Source: Guillardia theta CCMP2712
Lineage: Eukaryota; Protista; Cryptophyta
Direction: 5' to 3'
DNA: 64,000 nucleotides
Assembly: GCF_000315625.1 (NCBI RefSeq)
Contig: NW_005434647.1
Coordinates: 229,132-293,131, forward strand
Positions 1 through 60,189 of this stretch are shown one piece after another. The position numbers and the translations under genes are program-made. The notes beneath the pieces are model-generated. The model saw only the letters and a program-made list of their open reading frames with translations. It did no database searches and was not told the DNA's origin. Numbering within the stretch: position 1 is the stretch's first letter; every line of letters starts with the position of its first letter.

Positions 1-2585
1 GCTTGATAGCATCGAGGCTGAAATCTTTGGGGGGACGCCGCAGGAGGCGAAGGGGGTGCACAGGGGAGGAAGGGAGGACGACGGAGGAGGCTCGCTGCTG
101 ATGAAGGTCGAGCACAGGAGGGGGCCTCCGATCCTCTCGCCGTATCTGCAGCACCACAGGGTGGTGCCGTCGAGCAGGAGGGCAGATTTTGAGAGCAAGT
201 GGATGCCCAAAGAGGTTAACGGCTCGGTGATGACGAGGCTGAAGAAGGAGCTGGGAAGCAAGGCCGTCCCTCGAACCATGTCCTTCCTCAAGTCGCTCAT
301 GAGGTCGCTGAGCCGCCTCCTCCCGACGGAGGGGAGGATGGCTCTCATCGAGGCACTGCAGAGCTACGAGGCTGGGAAGCTGTCAGAGGTGACCCTTGCG
401 GAGAGGATAAAGGGGCTGGTGGACCAGTACAGGATAGTGGTGCCACTTGAGGATGGGCACGGTTACCTGCCATGGAGGAGGTCGAGCAACGATCCCCCTC
501 CCCTGTCGTTTGATGAAGCTTCTCCTGCCAACGACGGGATGGCTGAAGTTTCTTTCACTAAGAAGGGGAAGCGGAAGCTTGACGATCGTGACGAGTTGGC
601 TGACATGCAGGATCCTGCAAGGCGAGCAGGGTTGAAACAGCAGGAGGACGAGGAAGGAGAGGATGGCTGCATGGAAGAAGGAGGGTCTTCAAGCAGAGGG
701 GCAATGCAGGGGGAGACGTCTAGTGAGCAACTCGAGGACACGCCGATGGCGCAGCATATTACGGGGAAAGTAAGGAGCGTGTACAAGAGCAGCATGCCTG
801 TGAGGGTACGGGTGGTCGGGGAGAAGGTCTCAACGGCAGGAGGGTACCTGCATCGCTCTAAGGCGATCATGGCGTTCCAGGAAGCGAGAGGGGGGAAAGA
901 GATCCTGCTGTTTGCCATGTACACCAACGAGTTCGGAGCAGACGCGCAGGCCCCCAACACCGGGAGGGTCTACATCGAATGCATAGACGGGCTGCCGCTG
1001 AGGCCGAACGAGAGGGGGGAGGAGAGGGAGGAGCTGGTGCGGGGGATCATGTACGGCTACCTGGAGTACATGAAGCTTTGCGGCTTCTCCTTCATCCACC
1101 TGCGGGTCCCTCCTCCCCACGACTCCAACTGCCAGATCTTCTCGAGGAGGCCGGCGGACGTGCGGCTCCAGTGGTCCATCAGGATGTCCCTGTGGCTCAA
1201 GAAGCTCCTGCGAAGCGCCGCGGCCGCCAAGATCATCGACGCTTACCAGTGTGGAGCCCATGGCAGCATCCTCAACTACCCCCCGACGCTCCTCCCCGCC
1301 CGTCACCTCTACCTGGAGTGCACCTTTGCCAAAGTGGAAGCAGCAAGTGCCAACCGTATCTCCTTCGCATCCCAGCAGCAGGTACTGGACACTCCTTCCA
1401 ATCCCCTCCCTGCTCGCCTACCCCCTCGTATGCTTCTCTCGTTGTCTGCGCCGTGTACCCCTGCCCTCTGTTGCTTGCTATGGTATATCGTTTAACGCGT
1501 TGGCAGCTGCGAGAAAGACTGTTTGTGGTTCGTCTGCACCCGGGTCCCAGGACAGGAGGAGGAACAGGCGTGCGCGCCATCGATCGCTCTCCCCTCGTCC
1601 CAGCGACCACCGCAGCCTCTCGGCAGGACCTCATGTGAGTCGAGGGGTAGCGCATCCTCAGGCCGCTGACGAGGAGAACGAGCAGCAAGACGTTGACGAC
1701 GCGGCGCTGGTCGTTTCACACTCTTGCTCATGCTACGACGACGACAACGGGACTGTGAGCTGGCACAGGAGCATGGGCGGCGTCTGATGGTTGCGAGCAG
1801 GTTGCAGATGCTGATCAGTGAGCAGCGAGCGGCGAGAAAGCAGGTGGGTGGGAAGAGGAAGCTGTTGTAAGATGATGACGCACCTGCAGGAGGCGACAGA
1901 GGCGTCATCCTCCTCCTATCCTGCTGCAGACACCTCGATGGCTGCTGCTTCGAGCTCTTCCTCCAAGGATGCATTTAGGACTCCTGAGCGTCTATCCCAG
2001 CAGCTAGCAGCCATGCTCGAGCGATCCGCCGAGACCACACCGGTTGTTGAGCATGCAGCGGTTCCTCTCAGTGACGGGGAGAGCGCAGAGTGGATCAGTG
2101 CCAACGCCAGGACAAGAACTTGCTGAGAACCGATCGGAGTTCCTGGTTAGGGAGGCAGCCTGTGCATATCCTGCTCTCCTTACTCCCCTTTCAGGATTCC
2201 GTATTTGAGGTCTGGGAGAAGCCAAGGGAAGAAAAGCTGGTAAGCCAACGCATCTGCCTCCTCCTGTTCCTCTTCTGTTCCCCTCCAAATCTGCTCTATA
2301 GCCCCTTGCTTTCCTTCCTTTCCTCTCCTTGTGTCCCGCCAGCCGCCATCTGACTTCCGGGCAGTCTGCCATCACTGCCAGCACCGTCTCGCCGCTCATC
2401 CAGCCTTCTCCGAACCTCCGGCACATGCAGGTGAGGACCTGCTGCAGGAGGGGACCTCACCGCTGACTCGCTTCAGCATGAGATGCAGGAGCTGGGGCAG
2501 CAAGAGATTGACGATGGCTCTTCCCTGTTCTGCATGGACACCCTTCAGTTGTGATCGGGACGTCAGGGGCCTTGGGAGTAGCTAG
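1..2585 (+). CDS. p300/CBP (KAT11)-type HAT-domain protein, 5' truncated, multi-exon; catalytic residues degenerate
   Basis: The frame is open from the window start. KAIMAFQE..LLFAMYTNEFG..PNTGRVYIECID..IMYGYLEYMK..GF..IH..PP matches the p300 HAT core. The exon from 1507 (LRERLFVVRLH..DRSPLVP..RQDL) and the next exon (RRWSFHTLAHA..T) match the HAT C-terminal part. The 3' end is uncertain (about 2480-2585). Confidence 0.8.
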
Positions 2586-3959
2586 GAAGGTCTCCTTCCC
2601 GTACAGCTGGGATGTTCTTGGGGCTGCGTTCTGCTCAGAACCCTTCCTCCTGCACACTTGCGACTCTCACTTGCTTCTTGGAACCTCTCTTGTTTCTTTG
2701 CCATGCGCCCTGTGCTAACTTTGACTTGTCTGTAAGATATGAATGCAATGAATGTAAGATTGAATGAATGCTCCGTTTAACTCAACCCACGTTTGCAGAG
2801 TATGTCACATACCTCGCTGACTTCACAATCATAAGAACCAGCGGGAATCGTTACAATTTCATGTACCCTTCTTGTATCGGTTTTGACTAGGATGTCGTTT
2901 TTGACCGTTTATTCATTTCCTACCCTTCCTACCCATTTTCATCCTTCTATACAACCTGAAGCTCCCTCACGAGCTCGTTTCACCTGCAGTCTGCCTTGCA
3001 ACCACAACCCAAGAAGTTCCCGTCTTGATTTATGGATGGGCCTAGCGATTTCTCTGACATCTTCAGCACTTTCATCGCTCCATCTTCAAGGACATTTCCG
3101 TTATGATCAATGCATGGCCTCCTGGTTATTTCCAGGTTGATGATACTAAAGGCGACACAGCCTGAAGCGCTGCCGCTGACTTGTCGATCATTGAAATCGT
3201 CCTGGACTTGACTGTAGATGGTGTTGCGTCGCACGCAGAAGCTGGCAGCGTGTGCTCGTGCACATGCAGTTGAGACCACCAGACTTGCTCGCCTTCGACC
3301 AGCGGAACATGCTGAGGGGCTTTGCATCACCAGGGCCCCATGCGAATCTCCAAAACTCGAGCAATGCAAATGAGGTCTGAGATGAGACGAAAGGAGGAGA
3401 GTTGAGCTCTGCGAAGATTGTTCGATCATGTCGCAGAAATATCTGAGGAAAGTGCGAGAAATGTGCACTAACGAGCCACAAAACAATGTGCGAAGCAACA
3501 AGAGCTGAGAATGAACCAGACACAGCGAGGAATTCAAGGTAGGAGGCGGAGAGAAGAGAGGAAGCAAGGCTGGGGGATGGAGGCGAGGAGGTTGCAAGGA
3601 GAGGAATCAATCTTGATCTATCTGCAGGAGGAGACGCTTAAGACGAGATTTCTTTACGGGCTTAAGAGGAGTGACAGGAGGAAAGGCAAGGCAAGGCATC
3701 GCTTCGAAGCTGCAAGGTCGCATCCCCTGCACCACCCTACCCCCAACTTTCCTCCATTTTTCGGGTACTTGACGGAGACCGGAGCGTTAAACCGCCGTGA
3801 CCCCCGTCAGCCGTCACGTTACCGGACCCTCCGGGATGGCTCTTAACGACTCCCAACTGGTGAGCGTATCTGAAACGAGGGGGTCAAATGCCCTTCTGAG
3901 TAGGGGTGGGGTCGAGCATTTATCTGCTTCCACGATAAGACCTGGTTATTCGCGTTTAA

Positions 3960-5480
3960 ACTTGAAGTACCGTACAAGTTGTCACGTACTGATTTTTAAC
4001 TTAACTTTGAGTAACTAAACTGTCCGCCGCTGCCACGGTCAGCCTGTCGTCGTGACAGATTCTACCATCGCGCGGCGGCGCAGCGATCGGACGGCGGTCA
4101 CTGGGCGGCCACGGGTGCGCGGCGAGCTTCGGAACGCGAGTCAACTTACGGTTCGGTCCGATTACTGAGTGACGGAGTGACGGTGCCTGCCGGCCGCTGA
4201 GCCTGACTTTGAAGTCAGTCAGGCTCAGCTTTACTAAACGGTTTACAACTTACTAACTTAAGTTACCGTTAAGTTAGCCTTGACTCAGTGAAGCCGGGCC
4301 GTCCGATCGGAACTTTGCCCGTCCGGTCGGCCCCGGTGTGCCCGGCCGATCATGCCAGTGCCTACCAAGCACGGGGCCGCCGCGCGGGCGTGACGGCGGC
4401 GGTCCGTCCCGGTCTGCGGCGGGGGCGGCGTGACTGAGCCCGAGGTGACTCGGGCCCGACTGGCAACCGTTGGCCCTAGTAGTGCCACCGACTCAAACCG
4501 TTCAACGGTTCAACGGGTGACCGAACTCCCGGTCCGTCACCCGGCGGCGGTGCCGTCCGACTCAGTCGTCATCAGTCCGATCCGATGCCGCGGCCCTGGC
4601 CCCGGGCCGGGCACTGATCATTGGACACTTGAGTTATTACGGTTAGCCTGTCCGATCACGATACCGTGAATCAAGCCTATGCCATCATCATGGCCGGGCT
4701 TCAGTGATACAGTGATCATGCGGACCGTCAATTGAACTTGGCAGTTACCCGGTAATACCGTGCCGCATGCCGTCCGTGACGGTCAGCCACGTACCCGGTG
4801 ACCGGTGGCCCTCCGACGGTTCAACGGTTGGCCCGGACTCCGGGAACGGCCCGGCCGCGGCCGGGGCGGCCGGGCCGGGTTCAATGGTTCGAGCCAGTGA
4901 CTTTCCCTCAGCCTGTCAAGTTACCAAAGTTAAGTTCAACGGTTAAAAATCAGTACGAGGACACTGATTGAATCAGGAGAGTATCGGACTCAGCAGGCTT
5001 GGCACAGGCCATACGACGAGAAGAGAAAAGACAGCGAGAACCAACCCTTATCCGGGCCTGCCGCAGTGCCGACTGTGCTGTCCCCTTCAGTAAGTTTCCG
5101 ACAGTGACTCAGTGACTGTCACAACTGACCGTACCGTCGGACGGTTGGCAGCGCAGTCCGAGGCGCTGAGGCCGCGAATTCAGTGCCGCAGGTTCTGAAG
5201 CCGCCTGAGGCCGCTGAGAACGAGCCACGGGGGCGGTCTGACTCAGTCGTCACGCCACGCGACTGAGCCTCCGTCACGGACTCGGAGTCCGACCCGGTAC
5301 AGTTCTGAGAGGCTGAGGCTGGCAGTGAAGGCCGGTGCCGGAGGGGCCCTGGCAGAACCCGGGCCGGCGGTCAGCGTCACGGGCGAGTCGCAGCCGCGCC
5401 ATCACCATGCGGTACTAGAGGGCCCTTACAGGCTGAGCCACGTACGGTACGGTAGTGGCCGCGGTGACTCCGACCTGATC
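3960..5480. repeat. GC-rich palindromic-word mosaic island (intergenic)
   Basis: Dense CCGATCGG, CCCGGG, TGACTC/GAGTCA, AACGGTT and TAACTTAAGTTA words, with no credible coding frame. Confidence 0.6.
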
Positions 5481-5667
5481 AAGTTGATGATTGAGATGAT
5501 GGATATGAGCCAACCATTTCGAGCTAAGTCCGGGCAGCATCCCGGCATACCATACAAGCTTCTCTATTGCTCCACTAGGAGGTGAAGTAAAACAACCCTC
5601 ACATCGAAGGTGCAAACAACCATTATATCGAAGGTGCGATGACACAAGAACCGTTGTGTGGAACATG

Positions 5668-6504
5668 TTACGCGGATGAAGGAGTCTGGTATTCGTGTGT
5701 GCACGTATAGGCAAAGTATCCGTCACTGCAATACAGACCTGACAACTAGCAGATAGAAGACTTCATGGGGAATTGCACCTTCGTACTGCCACAAGCCATA
5801 AAACGAGTTGGATGATTGATCGTAGCTGCGTTGAACAACATGATTCGCTTGACTGGGCTCGATCCTGAACGTTCAAGTAGAGGCACACCATTGATCGTTT
5901 TCATCGTGTCTAGCCTGGTTTGCTTGTCCCGCCCATGGGTTTTCTCCCCATCTTTTCCAGCACTGATGACCCCTGGTGAGATAACGCGCTGCATGTTCTC
6001 TTGCGGCTACGCCGAGAAACTCCGGGCTGTATTTGTTAGCACGCATACCTTCCAGAGTCTTCCACTAGCTATAGGCTCTCATGTTCTCCGCTGCCATCAT
6101 GGCGGTCGTCGTTCGCTCTCCTTGTCACTCCTCTGGTGACTAGAAGGGCAAACCGGAGCAAACAAAGGAGGGGGAGGATAGAGCCTACAAACCCGCCTCA
6201 ATAAAATACTAGGAAACGAAGGAGGCAGCGAAAACCGGCACTCCAACCACGTAAGCGACGGCATGCACGACAAGCAGGGGAACAAGGATCAGGACAAAGA
6301 GCAGTAGCGCAAGGCCCCTGCGAGGAGGACGGATAGTGAAACACGCGCAAGGGGCGGATCTCCTGAGTTAACTAAAGATATCAGTCACCCCGTGCACGAT
6401 AGGTGGCCGGGTGCCGCCTGTTTTACTGCGGAGCCCCCGGGTCTGAGCGGGAAGGAGGGGTATCTGTATGAAATGCACACCACACAAACTTGACGGGGGG
6501 GCAT
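5668..6504 (-). CDS. Hypothetical small single-pass membrane protein with Cys/aromatic-rich C-terminus (spliced, not in the ORF track)
   Basis: Manual splicing gives MPPRQ|IPLLPAQ..|..RRGLALLLFVLILVPLLVVHAVAYVVGV..|WKTLEGMRANKYSPEFLGVAAREHAARYLTRGHQCWKRWGENPWAGQANQARHDENDQC|YDQSSNSFYGLWQYEG|LYCSDGYFAYTCTHEYQTPSSA*. The last three exons join in phase through GT-AG introns. Confidence 0.5.
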
Positions 6505-6757
6505 GCAGAGCGAGAGGAGGGGAGGGAGAGGTATGGAGATAGTCAGAGAGCACACCACACAAACTTAGGGAGAGGGAGGATGAGAGGATAGGTAGATAGA
6601 GTATGAGGTAGATGGACGGCCTGCTAGACACCCTGGAAGGTGATTGGAGGCGATGGCGCCGAAAGCAAGGAACGAGGGTTGCGAGAGTGCAAGAGTACAA
6701 GAGAGAAGGACAACCAGAGATAAACAGTCAGAGAGGGAGAGATTGGATTCATCTCGA

Positions 6758-9677
6758 ATGACGTCTTGTTACAGGCCAGCCTGCACTCCCATGAAGGCCA
6801 AATCTGTGTACCTCACTGGGAAACTCATATGTGGCGGGACAAGCGTGTCGAGGAGCATGCGCGTAACGCCACAGTTGACTGCAATTGTGCACCCCAAGTG
6901 GATCAGGTCCGATGGACTGACGCATCAGCTTTGCCTTCATGCCCGGAGCAGACAGCTGCAGCTGGTAAGCAGCCAGTGCTATACCACATGTGCAAGGGGA
7001 GGGCGATCGCGGCCGCAGGAGGCAACTAGGGAGCGATGGTTTCACTCTAGCAGAGTCTTGGGTCATGACGTGCGGAAGATTAAGGATGTTGCTCGTGAGG
7101 ACGCCAAGGGCGAGGAGGGCAAGCCGGACGACGAGGCCAACCACCGAGAGGCGCTCAACGTGACGTACCTTGGACTCGGGAAGAACATTGTGTTGTGCGT
7201 CGGGAAAGGTAATTGTGGCGTGTTGACCTTGTGCTCTTGCTCCCGTGTGGGCGCCCCACTGCTCTACTTCCGCATCCTTCCTGTCTCTACATCTCTCTAT
7301 CTCTCTGTCTCTCCCCCGCCCCCCCCCCCTTTCCCCCACTTTCTCCTTCTCCCTCCCTCCCCCCCCCCTCCCTCTCCCGGCGATATTGTCCTCCGGTGTC
7401 GTCCTACATCGCACTTTGTAATGTCCCTTGCTGCTGCTTCCCAGGCGTTTTCGGCGTCACCGCCAACTCCTCGGCTCTCATAGCCGACGCCATTCACTCG
7501 CTCTCCGACATGGTCGCTGACCTTGTCGCCCTCGCCACCCTCAAAGTTGCACATCTTCCAGCAGACAAGAAATACCCCTACGGTCAGCTGCCCCCCCTCC
7601 TCCTCCTTCATCTCCTCCTTCATCATCTCCTTCCCCTTCTTCCTTGTTTGTTGAGCCACCATGATGATTCCAACTGTCTTTCTGCTCTTTTTTTCTCTCC
7701 TCCTCTTGCTCTTGTGGTTTCTCTCTTCTTCTTCTTGATCTCTCTTCCTCGGCCCGATATTGATCGAACCGCAGGGCACGGCAAGTTCGAGTCCATCGGG
7801 GCCCTGTGTGTGAGTCGTGCTAGCGAATAGGTCGATGACAGCTGGGGTATGACTATCTGTCAAGGTGTCGAGCATGCTTGTTGCTGCTGGCGGTGGGCTT
7901 GCCTATCACTCTGTCGAGCTGCTGCAGGTCTGCCATTTCTTGCTTGCACGAACGAGGGACGTGACTCGGGCAGGCGGTGGAGGGAGCAGCGGTACCCACG
8001 GCTGCAGCGCTGTGGATCAGCATGGCGGCGATCGGGCTCAACGAGGCTCTGTTCCACATCACGCTCAAGGCTGGCAACCGAGCAAGAAGTCAGACAGTGA
8101 TAGCCAACGCCTGGCATCATCGATCAGACGCCTGTCAGACCACTTGCTCCCCCAAGCTTCTGTTTGACAAACCCGATGATCCCCCCGCTCCTTCTCCCTC
8201 TCTCACGTTTGCTGTTCATGTCTTCAACATGAAATTCCTTCCTCCTCCCCTTCCTCCTCCTTGCCCACTCCCCTGCTCGAACTCATCTTTTCTGTCAGTG
8301 TCTTCTGTGGTTGCCATGGTCGGTATTGGCGCAGCCATGTCCGGCTATCCCATCATGGACCCGATCGCTGCTGGAGTCGTTGGACTCATGATAGCAAAGA
8401 CCGGTATGTCCTTCACTTCCTTGTGCGATCTCATTCATCTGCTTTCGCCTTCTCTCCTCCTTCTTGTCATCATCCTCTACCTCCTTTCCGTCTCCTCCTC
8501 GAGTAACTCGTTTGATTGCTTTCCTCTGTCCCCTCTCTTTCAAACGTCTCTGACGCAACCAAGGAGGAGAGATGGTCCTTCAGAGCGTGCGGGAACTCAC
8601 TGACGCCAACGAGGAGGATTTCATTGAGGTACTCGGACCCGACAGTCCCCCCTAGCTCCTGACTTGCTGTAGGCTCTGGCAGAGACCATAGGAGCAGTTC
8701 CAGGTTCATTGTCTGTCTTGCCTTCTTGTTGCCTGCTGCTCCCTGCGCTAACATGCTCTTGTTGCAATCGCCACTTTGTTTGCTGCTTCGTCGTGGATGC
8801 TCTCGAACTCCTGAAGGTGTCTCGAGGATTCAAGCTGTCCGCCATCGCCGTATGGGTCCTTATCACATCGTCGATGCTCAGATCGAAGTTCAGTGCGAGT
8901 TGTCTGTGTCTGCTGCGTCCCAGGTCTCCCCTTCCATCTCCTCCTCCTCCTCCTCATCATCATCATCACCACCACCACCACCACCACCACCTTTCTTGAG
9001 CTCTTCTGGCTCTACTTTCTCTTCTTCTGCCCCTTCAGTAGCTGACTTCCAGCCGCCAGGTCGCTGACTCGGCTCGAGCTGCAGTGAAGCGCGAAATGCC
9101 GGAGGTTGTTTTGCAGGCTCTGCTCGCACGACTGACCTGACACTCTCTCGTCCTCCGCCTCCTGGCATCCGCAGGTAACAGAGATGATAGTCCATATCTC
9201 TCCAGNNNNNNNNNNNNNNNNNNNNNNNNNNNNNNNNNNNNNNNNNNNNNNNNNNNNNNNNNNNNNNNNNNNNNNNNNNNNNNNNNNNNNNNNNNNNNNN
9301 NNNNNCGGACATTCACCTTGAGCTGGAGGACCATTGCTGGGGTCAGTGCGGCCAGTCGCTGGGGTGAGTCCTGGGCGGACCTGACCTTTGCCCCGAGTTC
9401 CACCTCCTTCCTCCTCCCTTGTGCGCTCCTTCCTTGCATGCTTCCCCTTCTCTGCATCAAATTTCATCCCGGGGTCCTTCCGGGCCGACCTCCCGCGCCA
9501 CCCCAGGCCCTCCTTTTTCCCATCCGATGGCTCTCCTTTGCCTTGCTTACTTGCTCTGAGTTGCTCGCACGCAGCCCAACATGCGCCATCGCTGCCAAGG
9601 CGGAGAAGCTGAACAAGCCCAAGAACAGCGAATTGGCTGCGAGCACCTTAAAGGAGAAGAGAGCGGCAAGCGTGTAG
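6758..9677 (+). CDS. Cation diffusion facilitator (MTP6/MMT-like metal transporter), multi-exon, spans an N gap
   Basis: Motifs: NSSALIADAIHSLSD, PADKKYPYGHGKFES, IANAWHHRSDALSSVVA, MDPIAAGVVG, VRHRRMGPYHIVDAQIEV, VTEMIVHISP. The Arg-rich N-terminus suggests a mitochondrial presequence. The 3' end is approximate. Confidence 0.85.
9206..9305. other. Assembly gap (N run)
   Basis: N run. Confidence 0.99.
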
Positions 9678-9699
9678 CCGATGATTGACGCCGGGCTGC

Positions 9700-10490
9700 T
9701 GATAGCCTAACGCGACTCGCCCGGCCGAGTAGCGCATGCGCGTCATGGTAGGTCACCAGTGGTAGTCTAGACGATGATCGGATCAGTGAAGTACTGGCCG
9801 CATGTAAGCCATTGAAAGATTCTCCAGCCTGGCAGGCTCGCCGGACTGACTCGCTCTCGGCCGGCCTGCCATTCCGGCCCGCCGGCCCGGGTTGGAGTTC
9901 ACTGTCCGACAGCAATCCGCCGTCACTGTGACCGCGGAGGGGGGGCGCGCCGCGGCTGAGGAGTCGGGCTGCCACTGCCAGTCCGACGGTCAGGAGTCGG
10001 CACCGACGGTGAGTGCCGCCGCGCGGCCCGCCGTGATCGGATTCCGCGGCGCCGTGACAGTGAATCGGACTGGCAGCGCCAAGTGACTCAGTCGGAATGG
10101 CCCCGGCCGGTACTAAATTCAAATGATTTGTGACTCAGTCCGCCGATCATCATGCTAAGCCCGGGCCGCACCGTGACTCGGACCGTCACCGGGTGATCGG
10201 ACCGTGTGACCGTGCCACTGCCAGGAAGTTCAATTCCGACATGATCCTCCGAGGCGGCTCCCCCGGCGGGCCCAACTTGGCCCCCGGGCGGCTCGGTCCT
10301 GACTCGCCGCGGAGTCCGAGTCCGGGGCCGGCGAGAGGCTGGCCGCGGCCCACTGCCAGCCTGGAGTGCGGGCCCCCGGGCCGGGCCCGGCGCTTCAGTT
10401 CAGAGTCGGAAGGCTTCAACCGGGACTCAGCCGACGGGCACTGGAGTGTGACTAGTCACAAGTTTTTCAGACGGTCACTTGAAAGTTTCA
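9700..10490. repeat. GC-rich palindromic-word mosaic island (intergenic)
   Basis: Same word vocabulary as 3960-5480. Confidence 0.55.
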
Positions 10491-51605: not shown

Positions 51606-53688
51606 AAAATTATTATTTTTATTTTTATAAAACTATTTTATTTAGGGGGACATGTCATAGAAACAGAATCTTCAAAATTGTTTTAAGTCATCCTAGGAAC
51701 CTGGAAACGATGCGATTTTGGGGTCGTTTAAAATGCTGCAAACATCAAATAATTATTTTTGGCTTCCAAATATAGAAACTATTTATCGATTGCGACACAC
51801 TTAAAGGCCGCTCAATCCTTATAGTCAAGGAGAACTTTTTGTAGTCAATCATCTAACGGCTAGAAAGTGAAGGTTTTTACAACTTGGAGCTTTAAAACTC
51901 AGGAGAATGGCAAGCTCGCCTCAGAAACGCTGCGCAGGTTTCATAATGAGCTCTATGCGGAGCAGCGAGTCTGACATGTAACGAGAGCCTTGGGGATCCG
52001 ACTGGGGGCTCTCATACCTGGCAGCTGTACGAATAGAATGCGAAAACCTTGGTGATTTCAATCATCACCAAGTTGTACAGAGCTGATGCAGTTCAGCGAT
52101 GTATTGATTACAATGAGTTGACTGAAGCCTTTTCTCAAAGGACGTTACTGATAATAAGGCTGTTTGTTTCGGGGCCTTGACAGGCTGATGCCGTGCTTTC
52201 TACACCCTGCCTTTGAAGTCCATCAGCAGCCTGGAGATTGTCTTTCTTTTTTAAGTCAAGAGGTCAGACTGCAATATCAATTCATCTGGTCAAAAAAACT
52301 TGCTATGGTCGTCTTGCTTCAGTAAATGTGGGAATCGTTATCTCGCTCTATCATGGGGATCGTATTCGAAATCACAATTCTCCTTTTGATCATCTTCCCT
52401 TCTGTTTCTGCTCCACGTGCATCTTCATGGCACCCTCCATGCACCCGGGCAAGACGACGCTGAGTATGTCCACGTCAGTGTTCACCTCACGTCGCCTCCC
52501 ACTGCTGCACAGGGTGCTTCCTCTTCATACACACTCCAGAAGCATCTCCTCCGGGTAGTCCCTATATCTCACTTCCGCCCTCCCCTTCCGCGTTCCCTCC
52601 CTCCTCGTTTTCCCCTGCTCGCCCTCTGCTCCTCCCCGTTGCTCAGCCCTCATCCCCCCTCCTCCTTTTCCCGCACTGCTAAGTTCTCTAAAATAGTTTT
52701 AATTACTACATATTTTTAAAGGCATTTATAAAACTCGCTGGCAACCGTCGCTACTCGTCGGACCGGTGGTATATGTTTTCGGATGGGGTGAAAGTAACAA
52801 CAGGGTACTCCAAACAGGTTCTTGAGGGCAAATAATTGCAGTATCGCCTTATTTATTATAGGAAGAATTAGAAAACTGCGAGTATGTGAATATGATAAAT
52901 CCAACTACCTAGAGATCAATTCATAGTACCCCGTATCTTCTTCAGTAAGGGTTTGGGGTAGTTGAACAGAGCGAAAAGACTTTATTTCGATCAGTGCGAC
53001 CCACATCTGTAGCAAGCGAGAGAGGGACAAGAATGCAGCAAGGGATGCGGCTCGAGCAGCACGATGAGGGACAGGGGCGGGAGAGGAGGACGAACGGAGG
53101 GAGGGAGGGAGGGAGGGAGGAGGGGATTGAAAAGGAGTCCATAGAGACCATGCGAACCAATATGAAGGAGGGAGGACGAGACAGGACGAGACAGGACAGC
53201 ACAGGATGGATGGTAAAATGCAAATGGCGACTGAGCAGCGCAAGAAACCTTTGAAGGCTGGAGGTGATTTTTAGGTCAGGACTAGCGTCGAAGGAAGTCA
53301 TGGCAACAGTTCGATAGTCTGTGCCAACAAACAAGGGAAAGAAGAAGTTTGCTTGCTTGGAGCAACGAACTCGATTTTTATGTTTTGGCAAAGCAATCAG
53401 CTAAGATAGATGGAGATGGGTGGTCATTCGATGAAGAGGAGATGGGATGATAATACAATTCTTCTGATAGATCCTATCAACGCAAGAGGTAGCTTGTCTG
53501 GCGAGTAGATGTTGATGAGAAGAAAACGACTCTGAAAATAGCCATTGTGGAAATGTATATGGTACCTTATTAGACTTCTGACGATGTCACAGATGATATC
53601 ATAGAGCCATGAATTGACATCGCCAAAGACGCATGACTGTCATGCTGTTGCGCAACACTTGCACTTAGGCCACGAGGGCGTCAGAGCG

Positions 53689-55522
53689 ATGGGAGGGAAC
53701 AGGTCTGTCTGCGAGATCTCAACGTCGGACAGTCTCTTTCACGGCTACTCTCACATCACCAGCTGCAAACCTCAGGCTCTGCCTATCGCGCCCTCCAAGT
53801 TGGAAGGCTGCACCAAGGGAAAGAGGAGCAAGGAGTTGGATGGCACCGCCGCCGCTGGCTCCTCCGCCTCCACCGTGCCCTCCCTCGCCTCCCTGCTCAA
53901 CGGGGGGCGGAGCCAGAAGAACACGAAATCTAAGAAGAGCCTTGCAAGGGAGGAGGCGGATGTACATACAATCGGCGATTCCGCAGGTCATGCGGATCAT
54001 GAGGAGCTGGGTGAAAGCAGATCCCGAAGAAGCAGCGGAGGGTTGAGCGTGGCTGAGTTGACCCAAGAGGAGAGCAGGACTGAGGCGATCTCCAAGAAGG
54101 AGCTGCATGAATGGTTCGGCGTCGGGCAGAAGAGAAGCGCCGAGGATGCGGTTCCCTTGCAGAGCAAGAGCTTGCAGTCTGGCGGGCAGGAGGGAGCAGA
54201 GGATGCAGGTCGGCCGTTAAAGAAGTTCCTGTCTGCAAGCGAGGGGGCAACTACCGTATCGGATGCCCCGGTGAAGCTTGAGGCGTCGTCCTCCTCAACC
54301 TACTCGATGCTCAAGGACGTCCGGTGGGAGAGGAAAGGACAGCCCTTTGAGTTCCTCAAGGCAGAGGAAGCAGCTGCTGCGAGCATGCCGAGCAACTGGA
54401 ACCCTCGGCCATCCTTCGGTAGCGACCCTGCGAGCATGGCGAGCTATGGCATGAGCGCTTCTCTTGCCCATCAAAGGTTTCACATGCAGGGCATGGGGTT
54501 TTCTCAGTTCCAGGGAACCAGCAGCTTCCCTTCCCCGCACAGTCAAGAGCAGCAGGCGTATGCGATGCGGGGGGGGCAGGGGCATGTTTCCTATGGGGTA
54601 CCTGAGCTCGGGCAGATGCTGCCGATGCAGCAGTCGTTGACTGGCCCAGCTGTTCGCAGCATGCAGATGCCCTGGATCAGCTCGCAGTTCCTGCACCCGC
54701 AGAGCTTCTCCTACGGCTCGACCGGGGGGGCGCCGATGGCCATGGCTAATGGGCCCGTGCGAGAGGATGTGTTCGTCTCGCGCCCCTCCCCTTCTCCATG
54801 TGGCAAGATTCTGCTGTCAGCTTTCAGGCTCCTCCTTTGAGCTCTACCACACAGGTAAGATAGTACAAGACACTCCCTCCCTCCTCCCTCCTCCCTCCTC
54901 CCTCCTCCTCCCTCCCTCCTCCCTCCTCCCTCCTCCCTCCTCCCTCCCTCCCTCCCTCCCTCCCTCCTCCCTCCTCCCTCCTCCCTCCATCCATCATCTC
55001 ACTTCCCTCTCCATCTCCTCCGTCGCTCAACTAACGACGCATCGCAGCTCCCCAAAGATTCTGCCCAGCAGGAGCTGGGGCGGCACAGCAAGTACTGTCA
55101 CTTCTGCCAGCACGTCAAGAGCACCATGGCCGCCTGCTCATCTCCTCAGTGTACCTTCAAGTTCTGCCACAACTGCATCAGTGTTCACCTCATGGAGGAC
55201 TGGGATGCCGTGCTGAGAGCTGAGCGAGACAAGTCATGGAAATGCCCCTGCTGGTACTTTGGGTCTCCCGCCTCTGCCCTTCCCCTTACACTCCTGTTGC
55301 CTGCTGCTGCATCTCCTCCTCCTCCACCCCCTCCTCCTCATCTTTCTTCGCACTCTCCAAGCTTATCGCTTGTCTTGCGTCCCAATGGCTTGTTGACGTT
55401 TTTGCAGCCGGTACCGATGTTGCTGCTGCTCCTCCAAGGCATGCACAGCCAAGCATCCGCACTGCAAGGCCTACAGGAAGCGGCAGCAGACGCGAGTGAA
55501 TGTGGTGGAGGGAGGAGAGTAA
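53689..55522 (+). CDS. Protein with C-terminal zf-4CXXC_R1 (CDCA7/JPO-type) zinc finger and low-complexity N-terminus
   Basis: KYCHFCQHVK..ACSSPQC.FKFCHNCI..WKCPC|CRYRCCCSSKAC..HPHCKAYRKR. The start is uncertain. Confidence 0.75.
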
Positions 55523-55817
55523 GAAGAAGAAAGTTAGTCTGCGAGGAGGAGAGGATGTGGAACCGAGCAGATGAAGGAGAGGAGGCGACGCCCTCAGATG
55601 TAAGTTTGATGTAAATTACGAGCTTGTGGCCTTGCGGTTGTTCTACTTGTAATGAAAGGATAGAATCCTCGATCAGCTGCTGTGCACGGGGAGGAGAGAA
55701 AGATGGGCGGGTGAGGTTGAGACGATGAAATTGGAGACGGTGTGGAAACATGGAGGAGAGAAGAGATGAAGGGGGCCTAGGAGGAGTGACCAGAAGGAAG
55801 AGGAGGAGGGGAGAGGG

Positions 55818-56330
55818 TCACATGTTGAAGCTCTCGCTCGTCTTCTCCTTTGCCTCCTGCACTTTGCTGATCAGCTCCTTGTACACTCGATGAGCCTGCT
55901 GGGTCCTCGGGTGGAGGAGACCTTGAACCTGGTCAACACGCGTGAGGGGGGGGGGCGGGGATCACGGAGGCGTGTAGGGGCTGCATAGAGCGCTCAGGAA
56001 GCCAGAAAGAGGAGAAATTACGAGGAAGAGGAGGAGGAGGAGGAGGAGGAGGAGGAGGAGGTGGTGGTGGTGGTGGTGGTGGTGGAGGAGGAGGAGGAGG
56101 AGGAGGACGAGGAGGGGNNNNNNNNNNNNNNNNNNNNNNNNNNNNNNNNNNNNNNNNNNNNNNNNNNNNNNNNNNNNNNNNNNNNNNNNNNNNNNNNNNN
56201 NNNNNNNNNNNNNNNNNNNNNNNNNNNNNNNNNNNNNNNNNNNNNNNNNNNNNNNNNNNNNNNNNNNNNNNNNNNNNNNNNNNNNNNNNNNNNNNNNNNN
56301 NNNNNNNNNNNNNNNNNNNNNNNNNNTTCA

Positions 56331-56379
<49 letters not shown>

Positions 56380-59300
56380 ACAACAACAACAACAACACAC
56401 TCTTCCACCAACCACCACTCACTTGTGGTGAGTTAAGTTCATCTCGCAGTGCTTGACACTGGTTCAGCGACTGCAACGCTATCTCATGCGCTTCCTTGGA
56501 CCCCCAACTTCCTCCACCTGCCAGTCGCATCAGCCGGAGGAGGGGGAGGAGGGCGCAGCTACCTCCTATCCTACACAACGTGCCGAAGTTCAATCCCATC
56601 CAGTAGAGCGAAGTGGCATGGTCCTCCTTCGCCTCCTCGGATCCGATCTCGGCAAAGAGATCTGCCGCCTCCTTGGCGTACTGCGCCGACCGCACCATCA
56701 TCTCCTCCGTGTACTCGGGGGAGGACGCGGCCCACTTGTTGAGCAGCTCAGCGCATCTCAGCGACACTTCGGCCACGAGCTTGTGATCTCCCCCCAGCTC
56801 CTTGGTGAGCTCGCGAGCCTGAGAGCGCGTGAGAGAAGAAAGCGGAGGGAGGGAGGGAGGGAGGGAGGGAGGGAGGGAGGGAGGGAGGGAGGGAGGGAGG
56901 GACTAAGTTCACCTTCTCAAGGATGTTCTCTGCCTCCTTGAATTGCCCTGCATCCCCAAGGAATCGTGCAGTGATGAGACTGCTCTGCCACAACATCTAC
57001 ACCAGGCGATGAGTCCCTCCCTCCCTCCCCCTCCCCTTCTCCCTCCCTCCTCCATGGCTCCCACCTCCCCTCCCTCCCTCCCTCCTCCCTGCATTCTCCA
57101 GCTCCCCTCTCGTCCTTCTCACTCTGATTTCCTTCCTCCTCCGTCCAACTCTCATTCACTCCCTCCTTCCCTCCTTTATCCCCGCCCTCCCCCTCGTCCT
57201 CAAGTGCTCTCACCTGGGGCGCCATCCCCTCTTGCTCAAACTTCTGCAGCCTCTGCACGTAGCACTTGGAAGCTTCCTGGTACCCGCTGCTCTCCAGGTC
57301 TCCTCCTTTCCGCCAGAAGCGGAGGAGATCACCCTTGTCCTTGTCATTGTACAGCTGGTACAGCATATCCAGCGAGCTGGACAGGCATCTCCTCAACCTC
57401 GACCACTCCCCAACGCTCTCCAACACGTAGGGCAGCTCGCTCGCCGCCCTCCTCACGTCCTGGTCGCTCCTGCATCTCCATCGTCATCCCCTCGTGCCCA
57501 CACCCTGTCTAGCATACTTGTGCTTGTGCTCGAAGTACTCCGCCAGCCGCAGCTGAGCCTTCCGCACGTCCTCAGGGTTGCCCAGGTACCTTCGCTCCAC
57601 TGCGAGGCGGAAGGCGGAGTAGACGAACCCAACGAGGCCTTCGCTTCTCACCGCCAGGTCAGCGTTGAGCGCCTCCTTCAGCTCGGCCCACTGCTCGCCC
57701 TTGCCGCTGCAAGAACTCCCGTCAGGCTTCCAGGCTGCTTCATCGCCCTCATTCACCTCTCTGAGATGTTGAGGATCTCTTCCAGCTCCTGCAGTGAGAG
57801 GCCCTGCCGAGAGATGCAGAGGAGACTGAGGCTGTCCCTCACCAGCTCCAGCCCCATCTTCGCCTCCCACCTCTGCAGCATCTTTGCGTAGAGGGTCTCC
57901 TGAGCCAACGAAACACGGAGGGGTAAGGGGTTCGGAAGCAAAAAGACGAGAAGGTCAAGAGCGTTGACGGGGTAGTCAGGGATGTTCAACGGATGGAGTT
58001 CGGACGGGACTCGCGCACGTCGAGTGGAGGAGAGGAATGCAGAGGAGGAGAGAGGGGACAGACCTGCATGAGCACCAATCTGAAGTACTTGAACTCCTGG
58101 TCCGGCATCCTTGCGATGTTGTACTTGAGGGTCTTGGATGAGCTCGACTGCTCCAGAGCAGCCACTTGATCGGAGATGGCGCCGGGGTTCTGAAGGACCA
58201 GACGATCAGCGCAAATCCTTCCCGAGTTGATTCACAATCACAATCCGCGGCATACCTGGGACGGGACCACCAGCTCTCCACCGAACACCGAGAGGTCCTG
58301 AGAGGAAGGGAAAATCACCGTGTTTGACCCGGCATCACATGCTGACTCACGTCATCTTGACTTTGGATGATACTCAGGCCGTCTCGGTTGTCTTTGTTTG
58401 AAAAGGCTCCAGCCAAACCCCCGAATTCTCCACTCTCCGTTTCCTTCTTGACCTGCCACAGTTGGGAATCAGCCAGGTGCACATTGAAACGAAAAGGGAG
58501 GGGAAAGGGGGGGGGGGGAGGAGGTGGGAGAACTCACAGGCACAAGTTGTTGCTTTTGTGCGTGTTGCTCTTTGAGATGCTGTATCGCCTCCTCCAGGAC
58601 CGTGTTCATTGTTAGACTCTCCTGTTCCATTCATTCAGTCCGAGACATCTCATACCTCCCCTTCAAGAAGGGAGGGTAACCATGTCAGCGTTCCAGGGAA
58701 CTCACCTCTACATTCTCAACAGTCGGGATCAAAGCTTGAAGCTCTGACATTAACTCCTTTGTCTTCTCTCTCCTCTTGCGCTCCAACACTTTATGCTTCT
58801 CCATCCTCTCAATGGTGGCGGCCAGCGATCGCTTCGGTCCTCGCTTTGCGGGCTTTTCTTCGACTTTCTCTGAGACATCAAGCTCAAAAATTTCGAAATC
58901 AAAAGTCGCCGGCTCGACCTGCGGCAGGAGCTTCTCTCTTGCTACTGTGAGACGTCACTGCTGCGCTCTGCACCTTGGCTGGCTGTGAAGGAAGCGACTT
59001 GCTTTTGTCCATGCTGGGAAAGGGATCTTTATATCCCATGCCGTCGTTTCCACTGTCGGCAGCATGCAGGGCTTTTGTCGGCTGCACAAAGCCACTATTC
59101 CTGATTCACATCAACGATAAGTCAGAGGTCATCCTAGCATCGTACAAGCAAAGAGCAAAGGGAAAAGATCGTTACATGGCGGGTTGCATTGGTGGATAAC
59201 TCTGAAAGTCCTGTGCTGGCATCAACATGGGGTTGTTGACGTTGTTGTTCATGCTCAAGTCATTGCTGTACGGCTGACCGTACGGCATGGAGATGTTCTG

Positions 59301-59645
59301 AGGAATCGCATTGCCGCCACCAAACGGGCCTTGAGGGAAAGCGTTGAAGCCCGCGCTCTCGCCGTATGGGGCCATGGGGACCTCATTGACCATGTAAGGC
59401 TGAGACATGATGCCGGGAGCTCTGGGGAAGTTGGAGAAGGTTGATTGTGAGGACTGAATGTTATATTGGTTGTAGGGCTTGTTCGCGACATACGCGTCTG
59501 AAGTTAGGCCCTGCCCGAACCCTTGCAGGATGTCCACGTCTTGTCCTCCATTGAAAATCGATTCCGGCCCGTCCTGCGATGCCTCATACCTGAGCACGAG
59601 GTTGTGAGGATCGGACGCGACTAGAGCATTGCTTTACCATTCCAT
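55818..59645 (-). CDS. bHLH transcription factor fused to an NPHP3/TEP1-like post-NACHT helical domain and TPR-like repeats; many exons, spans an N gap in an intron
   Basis: bHLH: MEKHKVLERKRREKTKELMSELQALIP|..LTMNTVLEEAIQHLKEQ (58869-58538). Later exons: LLCISRQGLSLQELEEIL, GLVGFVYSAFRLAVERRYL, RRAASELPYVL..WSRLRRCL, DLLRFWR, GLLHPRT. Confidence 0.78.
56022..56396. repeat. Compound trinucleotide microsatellite (GAG/GTG ... CAT/AAC) around an assembly gap (N 56118-56326)
   Basis: Read directly from the sequence. Confidence 0.85.
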
Positions 59646-60189
59646 ACTGAGCGTCAGGCAATTCAGCAATGCAGAAGATCTCGAAAATCTGCACAACTTT
59701 GCCAAGAATACTTTCTAAACCAGAGAAGACTTGATTTCTCTGCTGAGGTACAAGCCGAGACGCAATCTCATCGAGTTTGATCTGAAGAGAGAAAATGAAA
59801 GAATGTCAGTCAGAGTCAAAGATGCGCATGACGCGGTCGATCTACTTGAGCCCAAGCATGCGAAATGGCACTATAGGACACCAGGGTCATAAGGAGTTGA
59901 TGCATGCTGGCTACCATTAGTGGATGGAGCAAGAAAAGCAGATGAAGAAAGAGAATCTCATTGGGGAAGGTTGAAGGACTCAGGGACATGAAGCGATCGC
60001 AATCCGAAGGAGAGCTTCATGGCGAGCAACCAACGAGCAGGTCGGTGGAGCGCAAGGATAAGGTTAGGAAGCAGCGAGGGGAAACCCAGAAAAGGAGGAT
60101 ACGCAGGCATAGTAAGGAGAAGGAAGGTGTGTAGGGATGGAGTTGGAGCTAGTGGGGGGAGGGAGGACTGGTGGATGGAAAGGGGGGGA

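What the first reader, a model, noticed from the sequence alone, without database searches (positions are those of the whole stretch)
55818..59645. bHLH transcription factor fused to a STAND-type sensor module that lacks its NTPase
Seen: a bHLH absent from the ORF track (exons 58869-58706 and 58621-58538) has the H..E..RR pattern of CACGTG binders. It follows a Q/N/P/M-rich activation-like region. It joins through three short phase-0 exons (58452-58351, 58297-58256, 58189-58064) without stops to a region from 57899. That region resembles the helical/winged-helix part that follows NACHT in NPHP3/TEP1-like proteins, then TPR-like helices ending G..HP.T. No Walker A/B motif lies between them. Inference: an unusual one-component regulator with a DNA-binding dimeriser plus a ligand/protein-sensing superhelix. 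I do not recognise this architecture from characterised proteins.
Basis: partly seen in the sequence, partly recalled or inferred. Interest (0 to 1): 0.78.

Follow-up and report, generated by a model that had tools for sequence, protein, structure and literature searches.

The report
Cryptophyte bHLH factor with STAND-derived tail
This is a real, expressed gene of the alga Guillardia theta, conserved in related cryptophytes, that joins an E-box-type bHLH DNA-binding domain to the winged-helix and TPR half of an NPHP3/NACHT-type switch protein whose ATPase is missing; what the tail binds is not known.

Summary
On the minus strand, 59645-55818, lies one spliced gene. Single transcript contigs from three studies carry every predicted splice junction, including the chain that links the bHLH exons to the winged-helix/TPR exons.

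There are two corrections. One exon starts at 56996, not 56984. The assembly gap (56118-56326) hides about 297 nt (99 codons) of coding sequence that the transcripts contain. That gives a protein of about 850 aa.

Pfam finds HLH above its cut-off. It finds HTH_NWD1 and TPR_NPHP3 below theirs.

The closest relatives outside the family are DUF4062-NACHT-TPR proteins. They align from the winged helix onward, exactly after their NTPase. No Walker A motif exists in the readable exons or in any orthologue.

The same architecture occurs in:
- a second G. theta paralog
- Hanusia phi
- Teleaulax amphioxeia
- two metatranscriptome proteins

Amino-acid change between the two G. theta paralogs is low although synonymous sites are saturated.

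Function is inferred: a dimeric E-box factor whose TPR superhelix binds a regulating partner. I found no paper describing it. I rate it a new variant of known kinds, moderately interesting.

The parts
59646..59783 (-). 5' UTR; holds a short upstream ORF (ATG 59771, stop ending 59715)
   Evidence: Transcript contigs reach about 59714-59783; sequence read; ORF list.
59638..59645 (-). Exon 1, start codon; the protein begins MEWYEA
   Evidence: Joint 59586/59635 in three contigs. The MEWYEA start is shared with P0001 and P0032.
59176..59589 (-). Exon 2, low-complexity S/P/G/Q/N-rich N-terminal region
   Evidence: no Pfam family.
58919..59100 (-). Exon 3, rest of the low-complexity region
   Evidence: Joints 59099/59175 and 58869/58919; translation.
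58706..58869 (-). Exon 4: basic patch (KPAKRGPKR), basic region with H-E-R, helix 1, start of loop
   Evidence: Pfam HLH 27.3 bits, cut-off 20.7; own-genome HLH match at C27:287846-287932; joints.
58538..58621 (-). Exon 5: end of loop and helix 2 of the bHLH
   Evidence: Translation; aligns with helix 2 of BMAL1/MITF through orthologue P0032; joints.
58351..58452 (-). Exon 6, linker with the conserved motif GLAxAF...RDG
   Evidence: conserved columns in A2.
58256..58297 (-). Exon 7, 42-nt linker exon
   Evidence: Joints 58296/58350 and 58189/58256.
58064..58189 (-). Exon 8, linker ending in the invariant PDQEFKYFRLVLMQ helix
57757..57899 (-). Exon 9, first part of the winged-helix domain
   Evidence: HTH_NWD1 E 8.7e-4; aligns with the winged helix of P0037; joints.
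57518..57706 (-). Exon 10, wing and following helices (LVGFVYSAFRLAVERRYL)
57214..57469 (-). Exon 11, start of the NPHP3-type TPR region (ELPYVLE...LLRFWR)
   Evidence: TPR_NPHP3 E 1.1e-4, profile positions 18-87; phmmer hits.
56913..56996 (-). Exon 12, TPR helix; its acceptor is fixed by RNA at 56996
   Evidence: Joint 56996/57214. The orthologues' 'ILWQS' matches MLWQS.
56563..56818 (-). Exon 13, TPR helices
   Evidence: 80% identical to P0001/P0032.
56423..56517 (-). Exon 14, TPR helix; ends in phase 0
56118..56326 (-). Assembly gap hiding about 297 nt (99 codons) of exon sequence; flanked by (ATC)n and (CCT)n/(CCA)n microsatellites
   Evidence: Contig arithmetic in three runs. Orthologues have 100-106 residues here, with a TPR_12 hit.
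55818..55928 (-). Last exon (VQGLLHPRT...), stop TGA at 55820-55818
   Evidence: 77% identical to the paralog over 22 residues.

Best explanation
Window 59645-55818 (minus strand) is one expressed gene of Guillardia theta. It has at least 15 exons plus hidden exon sequence and encodes about 850 aa. From N to C terminus the protein has: a low-complexity S/P/G/Q/N-rich region; a basic patch followed by a bHLH with the His-Glu-Arg basic-region pattern of CACGTG-type E-box binders; a linker of about 100 residues; a winged-helix domain; and a TPR superhelix of about 370 residues. The winged helix and TPR are homologous to the part of NPHP3/NWD1-like DUF4062-NACHT-TPR STAND proteins that follows the NTPase. 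The NTPase and its first helical domain are absent. Shown here: the gene structure, its expression as one mRNA, the domain homologies, the absence of a P-loop, conservation in at least three cryptophyte genera, and constraint on amino-acid change. Inferred: the protein dimerises through the bHLH, binds E-box-like DNA in the nucleus, and its output is set by a peptide or protein held in the concave face of the TPR superhelix. Without an NTPase there would be no nucleotide-driven oligomerisation. On this view it works like the DNA-binding-domain-plus-TPR regulators PlcR/NprR, or like the sensor domain III of MalT. It is not a STAND switch.
For: One mRNA: contigs of 4.2-5.0 kb in X1, X2 and X4 (three studies) carry 13 listed joints, 12 with CT..AC ends. 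The lengths between the bHLH and winged-helix exons fit exactly (354 letters = 126+42+102+84). bHLH: Pfam HLH 27.3 bits on one exon. Orthologue P0032 scores 30.6 bits, and its best PDB relatives are BMAL1, MITF, TFEB, Max, ARNT and USF with H, E and R aligned. Tail: HTH_NWD1 and TPR_NPHP3 hit the same places in the window exons and in four orthologues. BLASTP of P0032 388-634 against P0037 470-740 gives 4e-24; P0037 carries DUF4062, NPHP3_N and NPHP3_hel. The Mytilus DUF4062-NACHT-TPR protein P0024 gives 1e-20. The AF2 model of P0032:330-860 has pLDDT 82.8. Its top Foldseek hit is the STAND-TPR protein 6mfv. Its ESM-Atlas neighbours are NPHP3_N/TPR and DUF4062/NACHT/TPR clusters, TM 0.64 over residues 43-526. 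The TPR part resembles APPBP2, TSK, Rap/NprR/PlcR, LGN, KLC1 and MalT domain III, Z 16-25. The winged-helix-only model is a winged helix. It matches the post-ATPase winged helices of 2fna, 2qen and 6mfv at Z 7.5-8.2. No Walker A in any family member. Conservation: paralog on contig C217; Hanusia, Teleaulax and two JGI proteins. Paralog A versus B has pN 0.17-0.18 with synonymous sites saturated.
Against: There is no experimental evidence for DNA binding, nuclear location, dimerisation or any ligand. The HTH_NWD1 hits (at most 19.6 bits against a cut-off of 27) and TPR_NPHP3 hits (at most 46.7 against 100) are below Pfam's curated cut-offs. The structural matches of the isolated winged helix are middling and shared with many unrelated winged-helix proteins. 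The 297 hidden nucleotides could not be read, so an in-frame stop there is excluded only by comparison with orthologues. The runs are labelled 'RNA?' (a guess). The one certified RNA run of raw reads showed almost no depth on the gene at 6% sampling. Structures were predicted for the Hanusia orthologue of the paralog, not for the window's own protein. A TPR domain can be a constitutive scaffold rather than a sensor.
Confidence: 0.6

Rival explanations
1. The architecture is the same, but the winged-helix/TPR tail is a constitutive scaffold. It would recruit co-regulators or build higher-order assemblies of the factor, and it would not respond to any signal. The STAND ancestry would then be history, not mechanism.
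For: The best structural matches include scaffolds such as LGN, KLC1, APC/C subunits and CCR4-NOT NOT10. Nothing here points to a ligand.
Against: Relatives of this TPR type serve as sensor arms in STAND proteins. The same search also returns peptide-gated regulators (Rap, NprR, PlcR, MalT domain III). The strict conservation of the tail fits either reading.
Confidence: 0.27
2. The tail works in trans with NTPase-bearing NACHT/NPHP3-like paralogs of the same genome. It could pair with their winged-helix/TPR parts, so that activation of a STAND receptor is passed on to, or titrated away from, transcription.
For: G. theta encodes several large proteins with HTH_NWD1 and many TPR_NPHP3 loci. The tail is homologous to their post-NTPase part.
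Against: No evidence of any such contact. The nearest NACHT-bearing relatives found are from other organisms at 30-34% identity. No complex was predicted or tested.
Confidence: 0.08
3. These are two neighbouring genes (a small bHLH gene and a TPR gene), or an assembly chimera, joined only by misassembled transcript contigs.
For: Logan contigs can merge overlapping transcripts. These contigs do run 1.2-2.5 kb past 55500 into a neighbour. An assembly gap lies inside the gene.
Against: Four consecutive splice joints link helix 2 to the winged-helix exon through exons of 102, 42 and 126 nt, in frame and without stops, in three studies. The same fusion is found in transcript-derived proteins of Hanusia and Teleaulax and in the gap-free stretch of contig C217 (L001) that holds the paralog.
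Confidence: 0.02
4. The gene is a decaying remnant of a STAND gene that captured a bHLH exon and has no function.
For: The paralog on C217 shows a one-base loss in its basic region in this assembly. Further paralogs keep only a helix-2-like remnant.
Against: The reading frame is intact over all readable exons, and the gene is expressed. Between paralogs pN is 0.17-0.18 while synonymous sites are saturated. There are long runs of invariant residues across four orthologues in both the bHLH and the tail.
Confidence: 0.03

Closest known systems
NPHP3/NWD1-like DUF4062-NACHT-TPR STAND proteins (for example Mytilus 'TPR repeat-containing protein DDB_G0287407-like' P0024/P0048; metagenomic P0037; P0030/P0049 'nephrocystin-3')
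   Same: They are homologous from the winged helix through the first TPRs to the C-terminal 'GxxHPxT' repeat. They are also the nearest predicted structures.
   Different: Those proteins have a DUF4062 domain, a P-loop NTPase and a first helical domain ahead of the winged helix. Here a bHLH and a linker of about 100 residues stand in that place, and no Walker A exists.
MalT and LuxR/GerE-type STAND transcription factors of bacteria
   Same: A DNA-binding domain and a TPR-like sensor superhelix sit in one polypeptide. MalT domain III and 'AAA ATPase + GerE + TPR' clusters appear among the structural neighbours.
   Different: MalT keeps the NTPase that drives oligomerisation, and its HTH is at the C terminus. 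Here the NTPase is gone and the DNA-binding domain is an N-terminal eukaryotic bHLH.
RRNPP regulators PlcR and NprR (HTH plus TPR, gated by a signalling peptide)
   Same: They have the same logic as proposed here: a dimeric DNA-binding domain joined directly to a peptide-binding TPR superhelix with no nucleotide switch. The TPR fold is similar: NprR Z 18.1-18.5, PlcR Z 15.7.
   Different: Only the general TPR fold is shared; sequence identity in the structural alignments is 11-14%. They are bacterial, the DNA-binding domain is of another class, and peptide gating of the cryptophyte protein is not shown.
bHLH-PAS factors (BMAL1, ARNT; diatom RITMO1, PMC6600994)
   Same: A bHLH is followed by a sensor or interaction module. 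BMAL1 and ARNT are among the best PDB matches of this bHLH.
   Different: The module after the bHLH is a winged helix plus TPR, not PAS. No Pfam PAS hit was found.
Group B bHLH factors MITF/TFEB, Max, USF
   Same: The His-Glu-Arg basic-region pattern and helix-loop-helix register are shared.
   Different: No leucine zipper follows helix 2. The partner domains are unrelated.

Membership tests
bHLH (Pfam PF00010) | Profile match above the curated cut-off | tested here: met
   27.3 bits on exon 58867-58706 alone, cut-off 20.7. Orthologues score 22.5-30.6 bits.
bHLH (Pfam PF00010) | Basic region with His5-Glu9-Arg13 (E-box CACGTG class), then helix 1, loop and helix 2 | tested here: met
   'KHKVLERKRR' in the window. 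H, E and RRR align with BMAL1 and MITF through orthologue P0032.
bHLH (Pfam PF00010) | Dimerisation and sequence-specific DNA binding | not testable with these tools
STAND NTPase (NACHT / NPHP3_N) | P-loop NTPase with Walker A and B | tested here: not met
   No NACHT, NPHP3_N or AAA hit in the exons or in four orthologues. No G-x4-GK[ST] in any orthologue. Only about 100 residues lie between the bHLH and the winged helix.
STAND NTPase (NACHT / NPHP3_N) | Winged-helix domain following the NTPase | tested here: met
   HTH_NWD1 at E about 1e-3 in the same place in the window and in orthologues, below cut-off. BLASTP 4e-24 to P0037 covers its winged helix. The AF2 model is a winged helix, Z 7.5-8.2 to the post-ATPase winged helices of 2fna, 2qen and 6mfv.
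STAND NTPase (NACHT / NPHP3_N) | C-terminal repeat (TPR) sensor arm | tested here: met
   TPR_12 above cut-off and TPR_NPHP3 at E 1e-8 to 1e-12 in orthologues. The model is a TPR superhelix.
TPR_NPHP3 (Pfam PF24885) | Profile match above the curated cut-off (100 bits) | tested here: not met
   The best score is 46.7 bits, covering profile positions 2-155 of 239. It is related to, but not a full member of, the curated family.
RRNPP (PlcR/NprR) | HTH (Xre-type) domain and a cognate secreted peptide | tested here: not met
   The DNA-binding domain is a bHLH. Only the TPR fold is shared. This is an analogy of mechanism only.

The most novel reading that the evidence does not exclude
The tail is the sensor arm of an immune-type STAND receptor that cryptophytes rewired directly onto a bHLH. 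Binding of a specific peptide or protein in the TPR groove would then switch E-box binding or activation without any nucleotide cycle. The ligand could be endogenous, viral or symbiont-derived. That would make it a eukaryotic one-component transcription factor derived from an NLR-like receptor. The paralogs without a basic region (contigs C52 and C158) could act as non-DNA-binding modulators of the same signal.
Probability: 0.2. Interest if true: 0.8.

Novelty: new variant of a known kind. Interest (0 to 1): 0.6.

Why it matters
Eukaryotic transcription factors that carry their own sensor are few: nuclear receptors, bHLH-PAS factors and aureochromes. STAND/NLR-type sensor arms are normally coupled to an NTPase switch and to death or immune effectors. 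This family shows that a lineage of algae cut the winged-helix/TPR arm off its NTPase and put it behind a bHLH. It then kept that arrangement under constraint in several genera and paralogs. If the tail does gate the bHLH, it gives a simple, testable model of how NLR-like recognition modules can be rewired to transcription. It would also give a handle on gene regulation in cryptophytes, where almost no transcription factor has been studied. It also corrects public annotation. The window's gene has no full-length model among the proteins my searches returned, and GUITHDRAFT_121221 is mis-modelled.

Tried and rejected
- Exons were searched one by one by reference, and orthologue proteins were used by id. 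Exon translations were laid end to end only inside local scripts, for the frame check and one tree.
- Raw-read RNA run X19: almost no depth on the gene at about 6% sampling, so it gave no transcript ends or strand.
- dN/dS between the two G. theta paralogs: not computable because synonymous sites are saturated (pS 0.87 or more). Only pN 0.17-0.18 is quoted.
- Tree of the family: the place of the window's gene relative to paralog B/Hanusia, Teleaulax and the JGI pair is unresolved.
- Foldseek of the winged-helix-only model against PDB: no match at E <= 0.001, only weak MarR-type winged helices. VIA-align gave middling Z values that do not separate STAND winged helices from ArsR/MarR ones.
- phmmer hits with many stretches (P0008, P0013, P0017, P0021, P0023) are generic TPR_12 repeat matches. 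I did not use them as evidence of kinship.
- Search of the own genome for the hidden exon on an unplaced contig: it found only paralogs.
- Literature: searches for bHLH in cryptophytes, for HLH with NACHT/TPR architectures, for GUITHDRAFT_121221 and for NLR/TPR in cryptophytes found no description of this family.
- No complex prediction was run. bHLH dimerisation rests on family knowledge, and the window's own bHLH is split over two exons with no single reference.
Full report
**Organism and locus.** The window is contig C27:229132-293131 of an 87.1-Mb, 669-contig genome. A paralog of the gene lies on a 67,834-bp contig. Its public model is 'hypothetical protein GUITHDRAFT_121221 [Guillardia theta CCMP2712]'.

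**Gene structure.** I read the minus strand and built an exon model with GT..AG introns. The exons are 59645-59638, 59589-59176, 59100-58919, 58869-58706, 58621-58538, 58452-58351, 58297-58256, 58189-58064, 57899-57757, 57706-57518, 57469-57214, 56996-56913, 56818-56563, 56517-56423 and 55928-55818, with the stop codon at 55820-55818. The protein start, MEWYEA, is shared with the paralog and with the Hanusia orthologue.

**Expression, and the gap test that was asked for first.** Eleven runs hold about half or more of the sampled words of the stretch, as expected for spliced RNA. I laid four runs on 55500-60189.
- In X1, X2 and X4 (three studies) a single contig of 4.2-5.0 kb carries 13 joints. 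Twelve have CT..AC ends on the plus strand, which is GT..AG on the gene's strand. They fall at my intron borders. The intron 56819-56912 has no listed joint, but the contig lengths fit it.
- One correction came out of this: the acceptor of exon 12 is at 56996, which adds MLWQ.
- Between the winged-helix exon and bHLH exon 4 the contigs hold 354 letters, exactly 126+42+102+84. So helix 2 is spliced to the tail through the three short exons in one molecule.
- Across the gap the contigs jump from 56421 to 55930 with non-canonical apparent ends. They hold 388 letters between window places 55930 and 56561. After subtracting exon 14 (95 nt) and correcting for the true exon boundaries, 297 letters remain that are not in the assembly. 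That is 99 codons.
- Both flanking exons are phase 0. Orthologues have 100-106 residues at that place, carrying a TPR_12 hit.

The gap therefore hides coding sequence. The two sides are one gene and stay in frame. The full CDS is about 2,553 nt, or 850 aa. I could not read the hidden letters, and no other contig of the genome holds them. The certified RNA run of raw reads (X19) had almost no depth on the gene at about 6% sampling.

**Domains, exon by exon.** Exon translations were laid end to end only in local scripts.
- Exon 4 alone scores 27.3 bits on Pfam HLH, cut-off 20.7.
- Exon 9 hits HTH_NWD1 (E 8.7e-4).
- Exon 11 hits TPR_NPHP3 at profile positions 18-87 (E 1.1e-4).
- The basic region reads KHKVLERKRR, which places His, Glu and Arg at positions 5, 9 and 13.
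- Through the orthologue P0032 the best solved relatives are BMAL1, MITF, TFEB, Max, ARNT and USF, with these residues aligned. From established knowledge of group B bHLH proteins this predicts CACGTG-type E-box binding by a dimer. That is an inference, not shown here.
- The first 197 residues are low-complexity (S, P, A, G, Q and N each 9-12%; Q+N+P+M 34%) and have no family.

**Relatives.** A phmmer search of 1.84 billion representatives with exon 11 found P0001 (80% identity) and cryptophyte fragments. After those came DUF4062-NACHT-TPR proteins matched once, at the equivalent place. Word and profile searches with P0001 and with an alignment of four full-length members found only six family members:
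- G. theta P0001
- Hanusia phi P0032 (860 aa, transcript-derived) and P0036
- Teleaulax amphioxeia P0033
- two JGI metatranscriptome proteins, P0034 and P0035

All full-length members have HLH, a sub-threshold HTH_NWD1 hit, TPR_NPHP3 (E 1e-8 to 1e-12, below the 100-bit cut-off) and TPR_12. None has a Walker A motif.

The next hits are NTPase-bearing. P0037 carries DUF4062, NPHP3_N and NPHP3_hel; its residues 470-740 align with P0032 388-634 at 4e-24, starting at the winged helix. The Mytilus protein P0024 gives 1e-20. So the tail begins just where those proteins' NTPase and first helical domain end.

**Structure.**
- AlphaFold2 of P0032:330-860 gave pLDDT 82.8: a long helix, a winged helix, then a TPR superhelix.
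- The top Foldseek hit is the STAND-TPR protein 6mfv.
- ESM-Atlas neighbours are NPHP3_N/TPR, DUF4062/NACHT/TPR, nephrocystin-3 and TTC41-like clusters, with TM 0.64 over residues 43-526. The list also holds bacterial 'AAA ATPase + GerE + TPR' regulators.
- VIA-align puts the TPR part beside peptide- and protein-binding TPR domains: APPBP2 (Z 25.5), TSK, Rap, NprR, PlcR, LGN, KLC1 and MalT domain III.
- The winged helix folded alone has pLDDT 85.5. It matches ArsR-type winged helices and the post-ATPase winged helices of 2fna, 2qen and 6mfv at Z 7.5-8.6. That is consistent but not discriminating.
- These models are of the Hanusia orthologue of the paralog, about 76% identical to the window's protein over the aligned exons.

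**Paralogs and constraint.**
- Contig C217 holds paralog B, with the same order of parts and extra introns.
- Between the window's gene (A) and B, nonsynonymous difference is 0.17-0.18 in both the bHLH and the tail, while synonymous sites are saturated. So the duplication is old and both modules are constrained.
- An alignment of four orthologues has long invariant runs in the basic region, both helices, the PDQEFxYFRLVLMQETLYA helix, the winged helix and the TPRs.
- A tree does not resolve where A sits among them.

**Interpretation.** The protein is not a STAND NTPase, because the defining P-loop was tested and is absent. It is a bHLH factor carrying a STAND-derived winged-helix/TPR arm. The most likely mechanism is a nuclear, dimeric E-box factor whose activity or partners are set by what the TPR groove binds, without a nucleotide cycle. 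By analogy it would work like PlcR/NprR or like the sensor domain of MalT. The main rival is that the tail is a constitutive scaffold. The two-gene or chimera reading and the pseudogene reading are largely refuted.

**Novelty.** Searches of the held literature found no description of this family. The sequences exist in public databases only as 'hypothetical protein', 'BHLH domain-containing protein' or 'TPR repeat protein'. I rate it a new variant of known kinds: real, conserved and lineage-restricted as far as searched, with its function still inferred.

Noticed in passing
L001 (G000:C217:5000-14999), about 3978-7916, plus strand; basic region near 4870-4900: This is paralog B of the gene. 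The public model GUITHDRAFT_121221 (P0001, 768 aa) skips the basic region and part of the helix before the winged helix. The assembly has a run of four A where five are needed (ATGGAAAA-CATAAG), which shifts the frame in the basic region. The Hanusia phi orthologue is intact there. It is either an assembly error or a real frameshift.
   Followed up: partly
L006 (G000:C52:231000-240999) about 7860-9990 plus strand; L008 (G000:C158:66000-75999) about 5900-3500 minus strand; P0050: Two further G. theta paralogs and a metagenomic relative (P0050, 511 aa) have a Q-rich N-terminus and only a helix-2-like remnant (VLEEAxEFLKQQKK). No basic region or helix 1 is recognisable before the same winged-helix/TPR tail. 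They may be non-DNA-binding members of the family.
   Followed up: partly
L007 (G000:C11:775000-784999) about 1980-3950, minus strand; also C177:10582-10758 and C247:31786-32067: There are two tandem copies of the C-terminal TPR part alone on C11, 41-45% identical to P0032 over residues 583-849. Weaker tail-only matches lie on two more contigs. What lies upstream of them was not examined.
   Followed up: no
window 56015-56117 and 56327-56405; also 56835-56910 and 57020-57200: (CCT)n/(CCA)n and (ATC)n microsatellites flank the assembly gap and probably caused it. (CCCT)n and GA-rich tracts fill two other introns of the gene.
   Followed up: no
window 59715-59771, minus strand: An upstream ORF of 18 codons lies in the 5' UTR, inside the stretch that the transcript contigs cover.
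   Followed up: no
window 53614-55656: The transcript contigs run 1.2-2.5 kb beyond 55500. The raw-read RNA run has depth 24 at 55500-55656 but almost none on the bHLH gene. ORFs on the plus strand (53614-54840; 55126-55614, with a weak zf-4CXXC_R1-like match, E 0.023) suggest a more strongly expressed convergent neighbour whose 3' end overlaps this gene's 3' UTR. The strand was not settled.
   Followed up: partly
window 58351-58452, minus strand: A short linker motif, GLAxAF followed by RDG(F/L)x(L/I)I, is conserved in all orthologues between the bHLH and the tail. No family or function is known for it.
   Followed up: no
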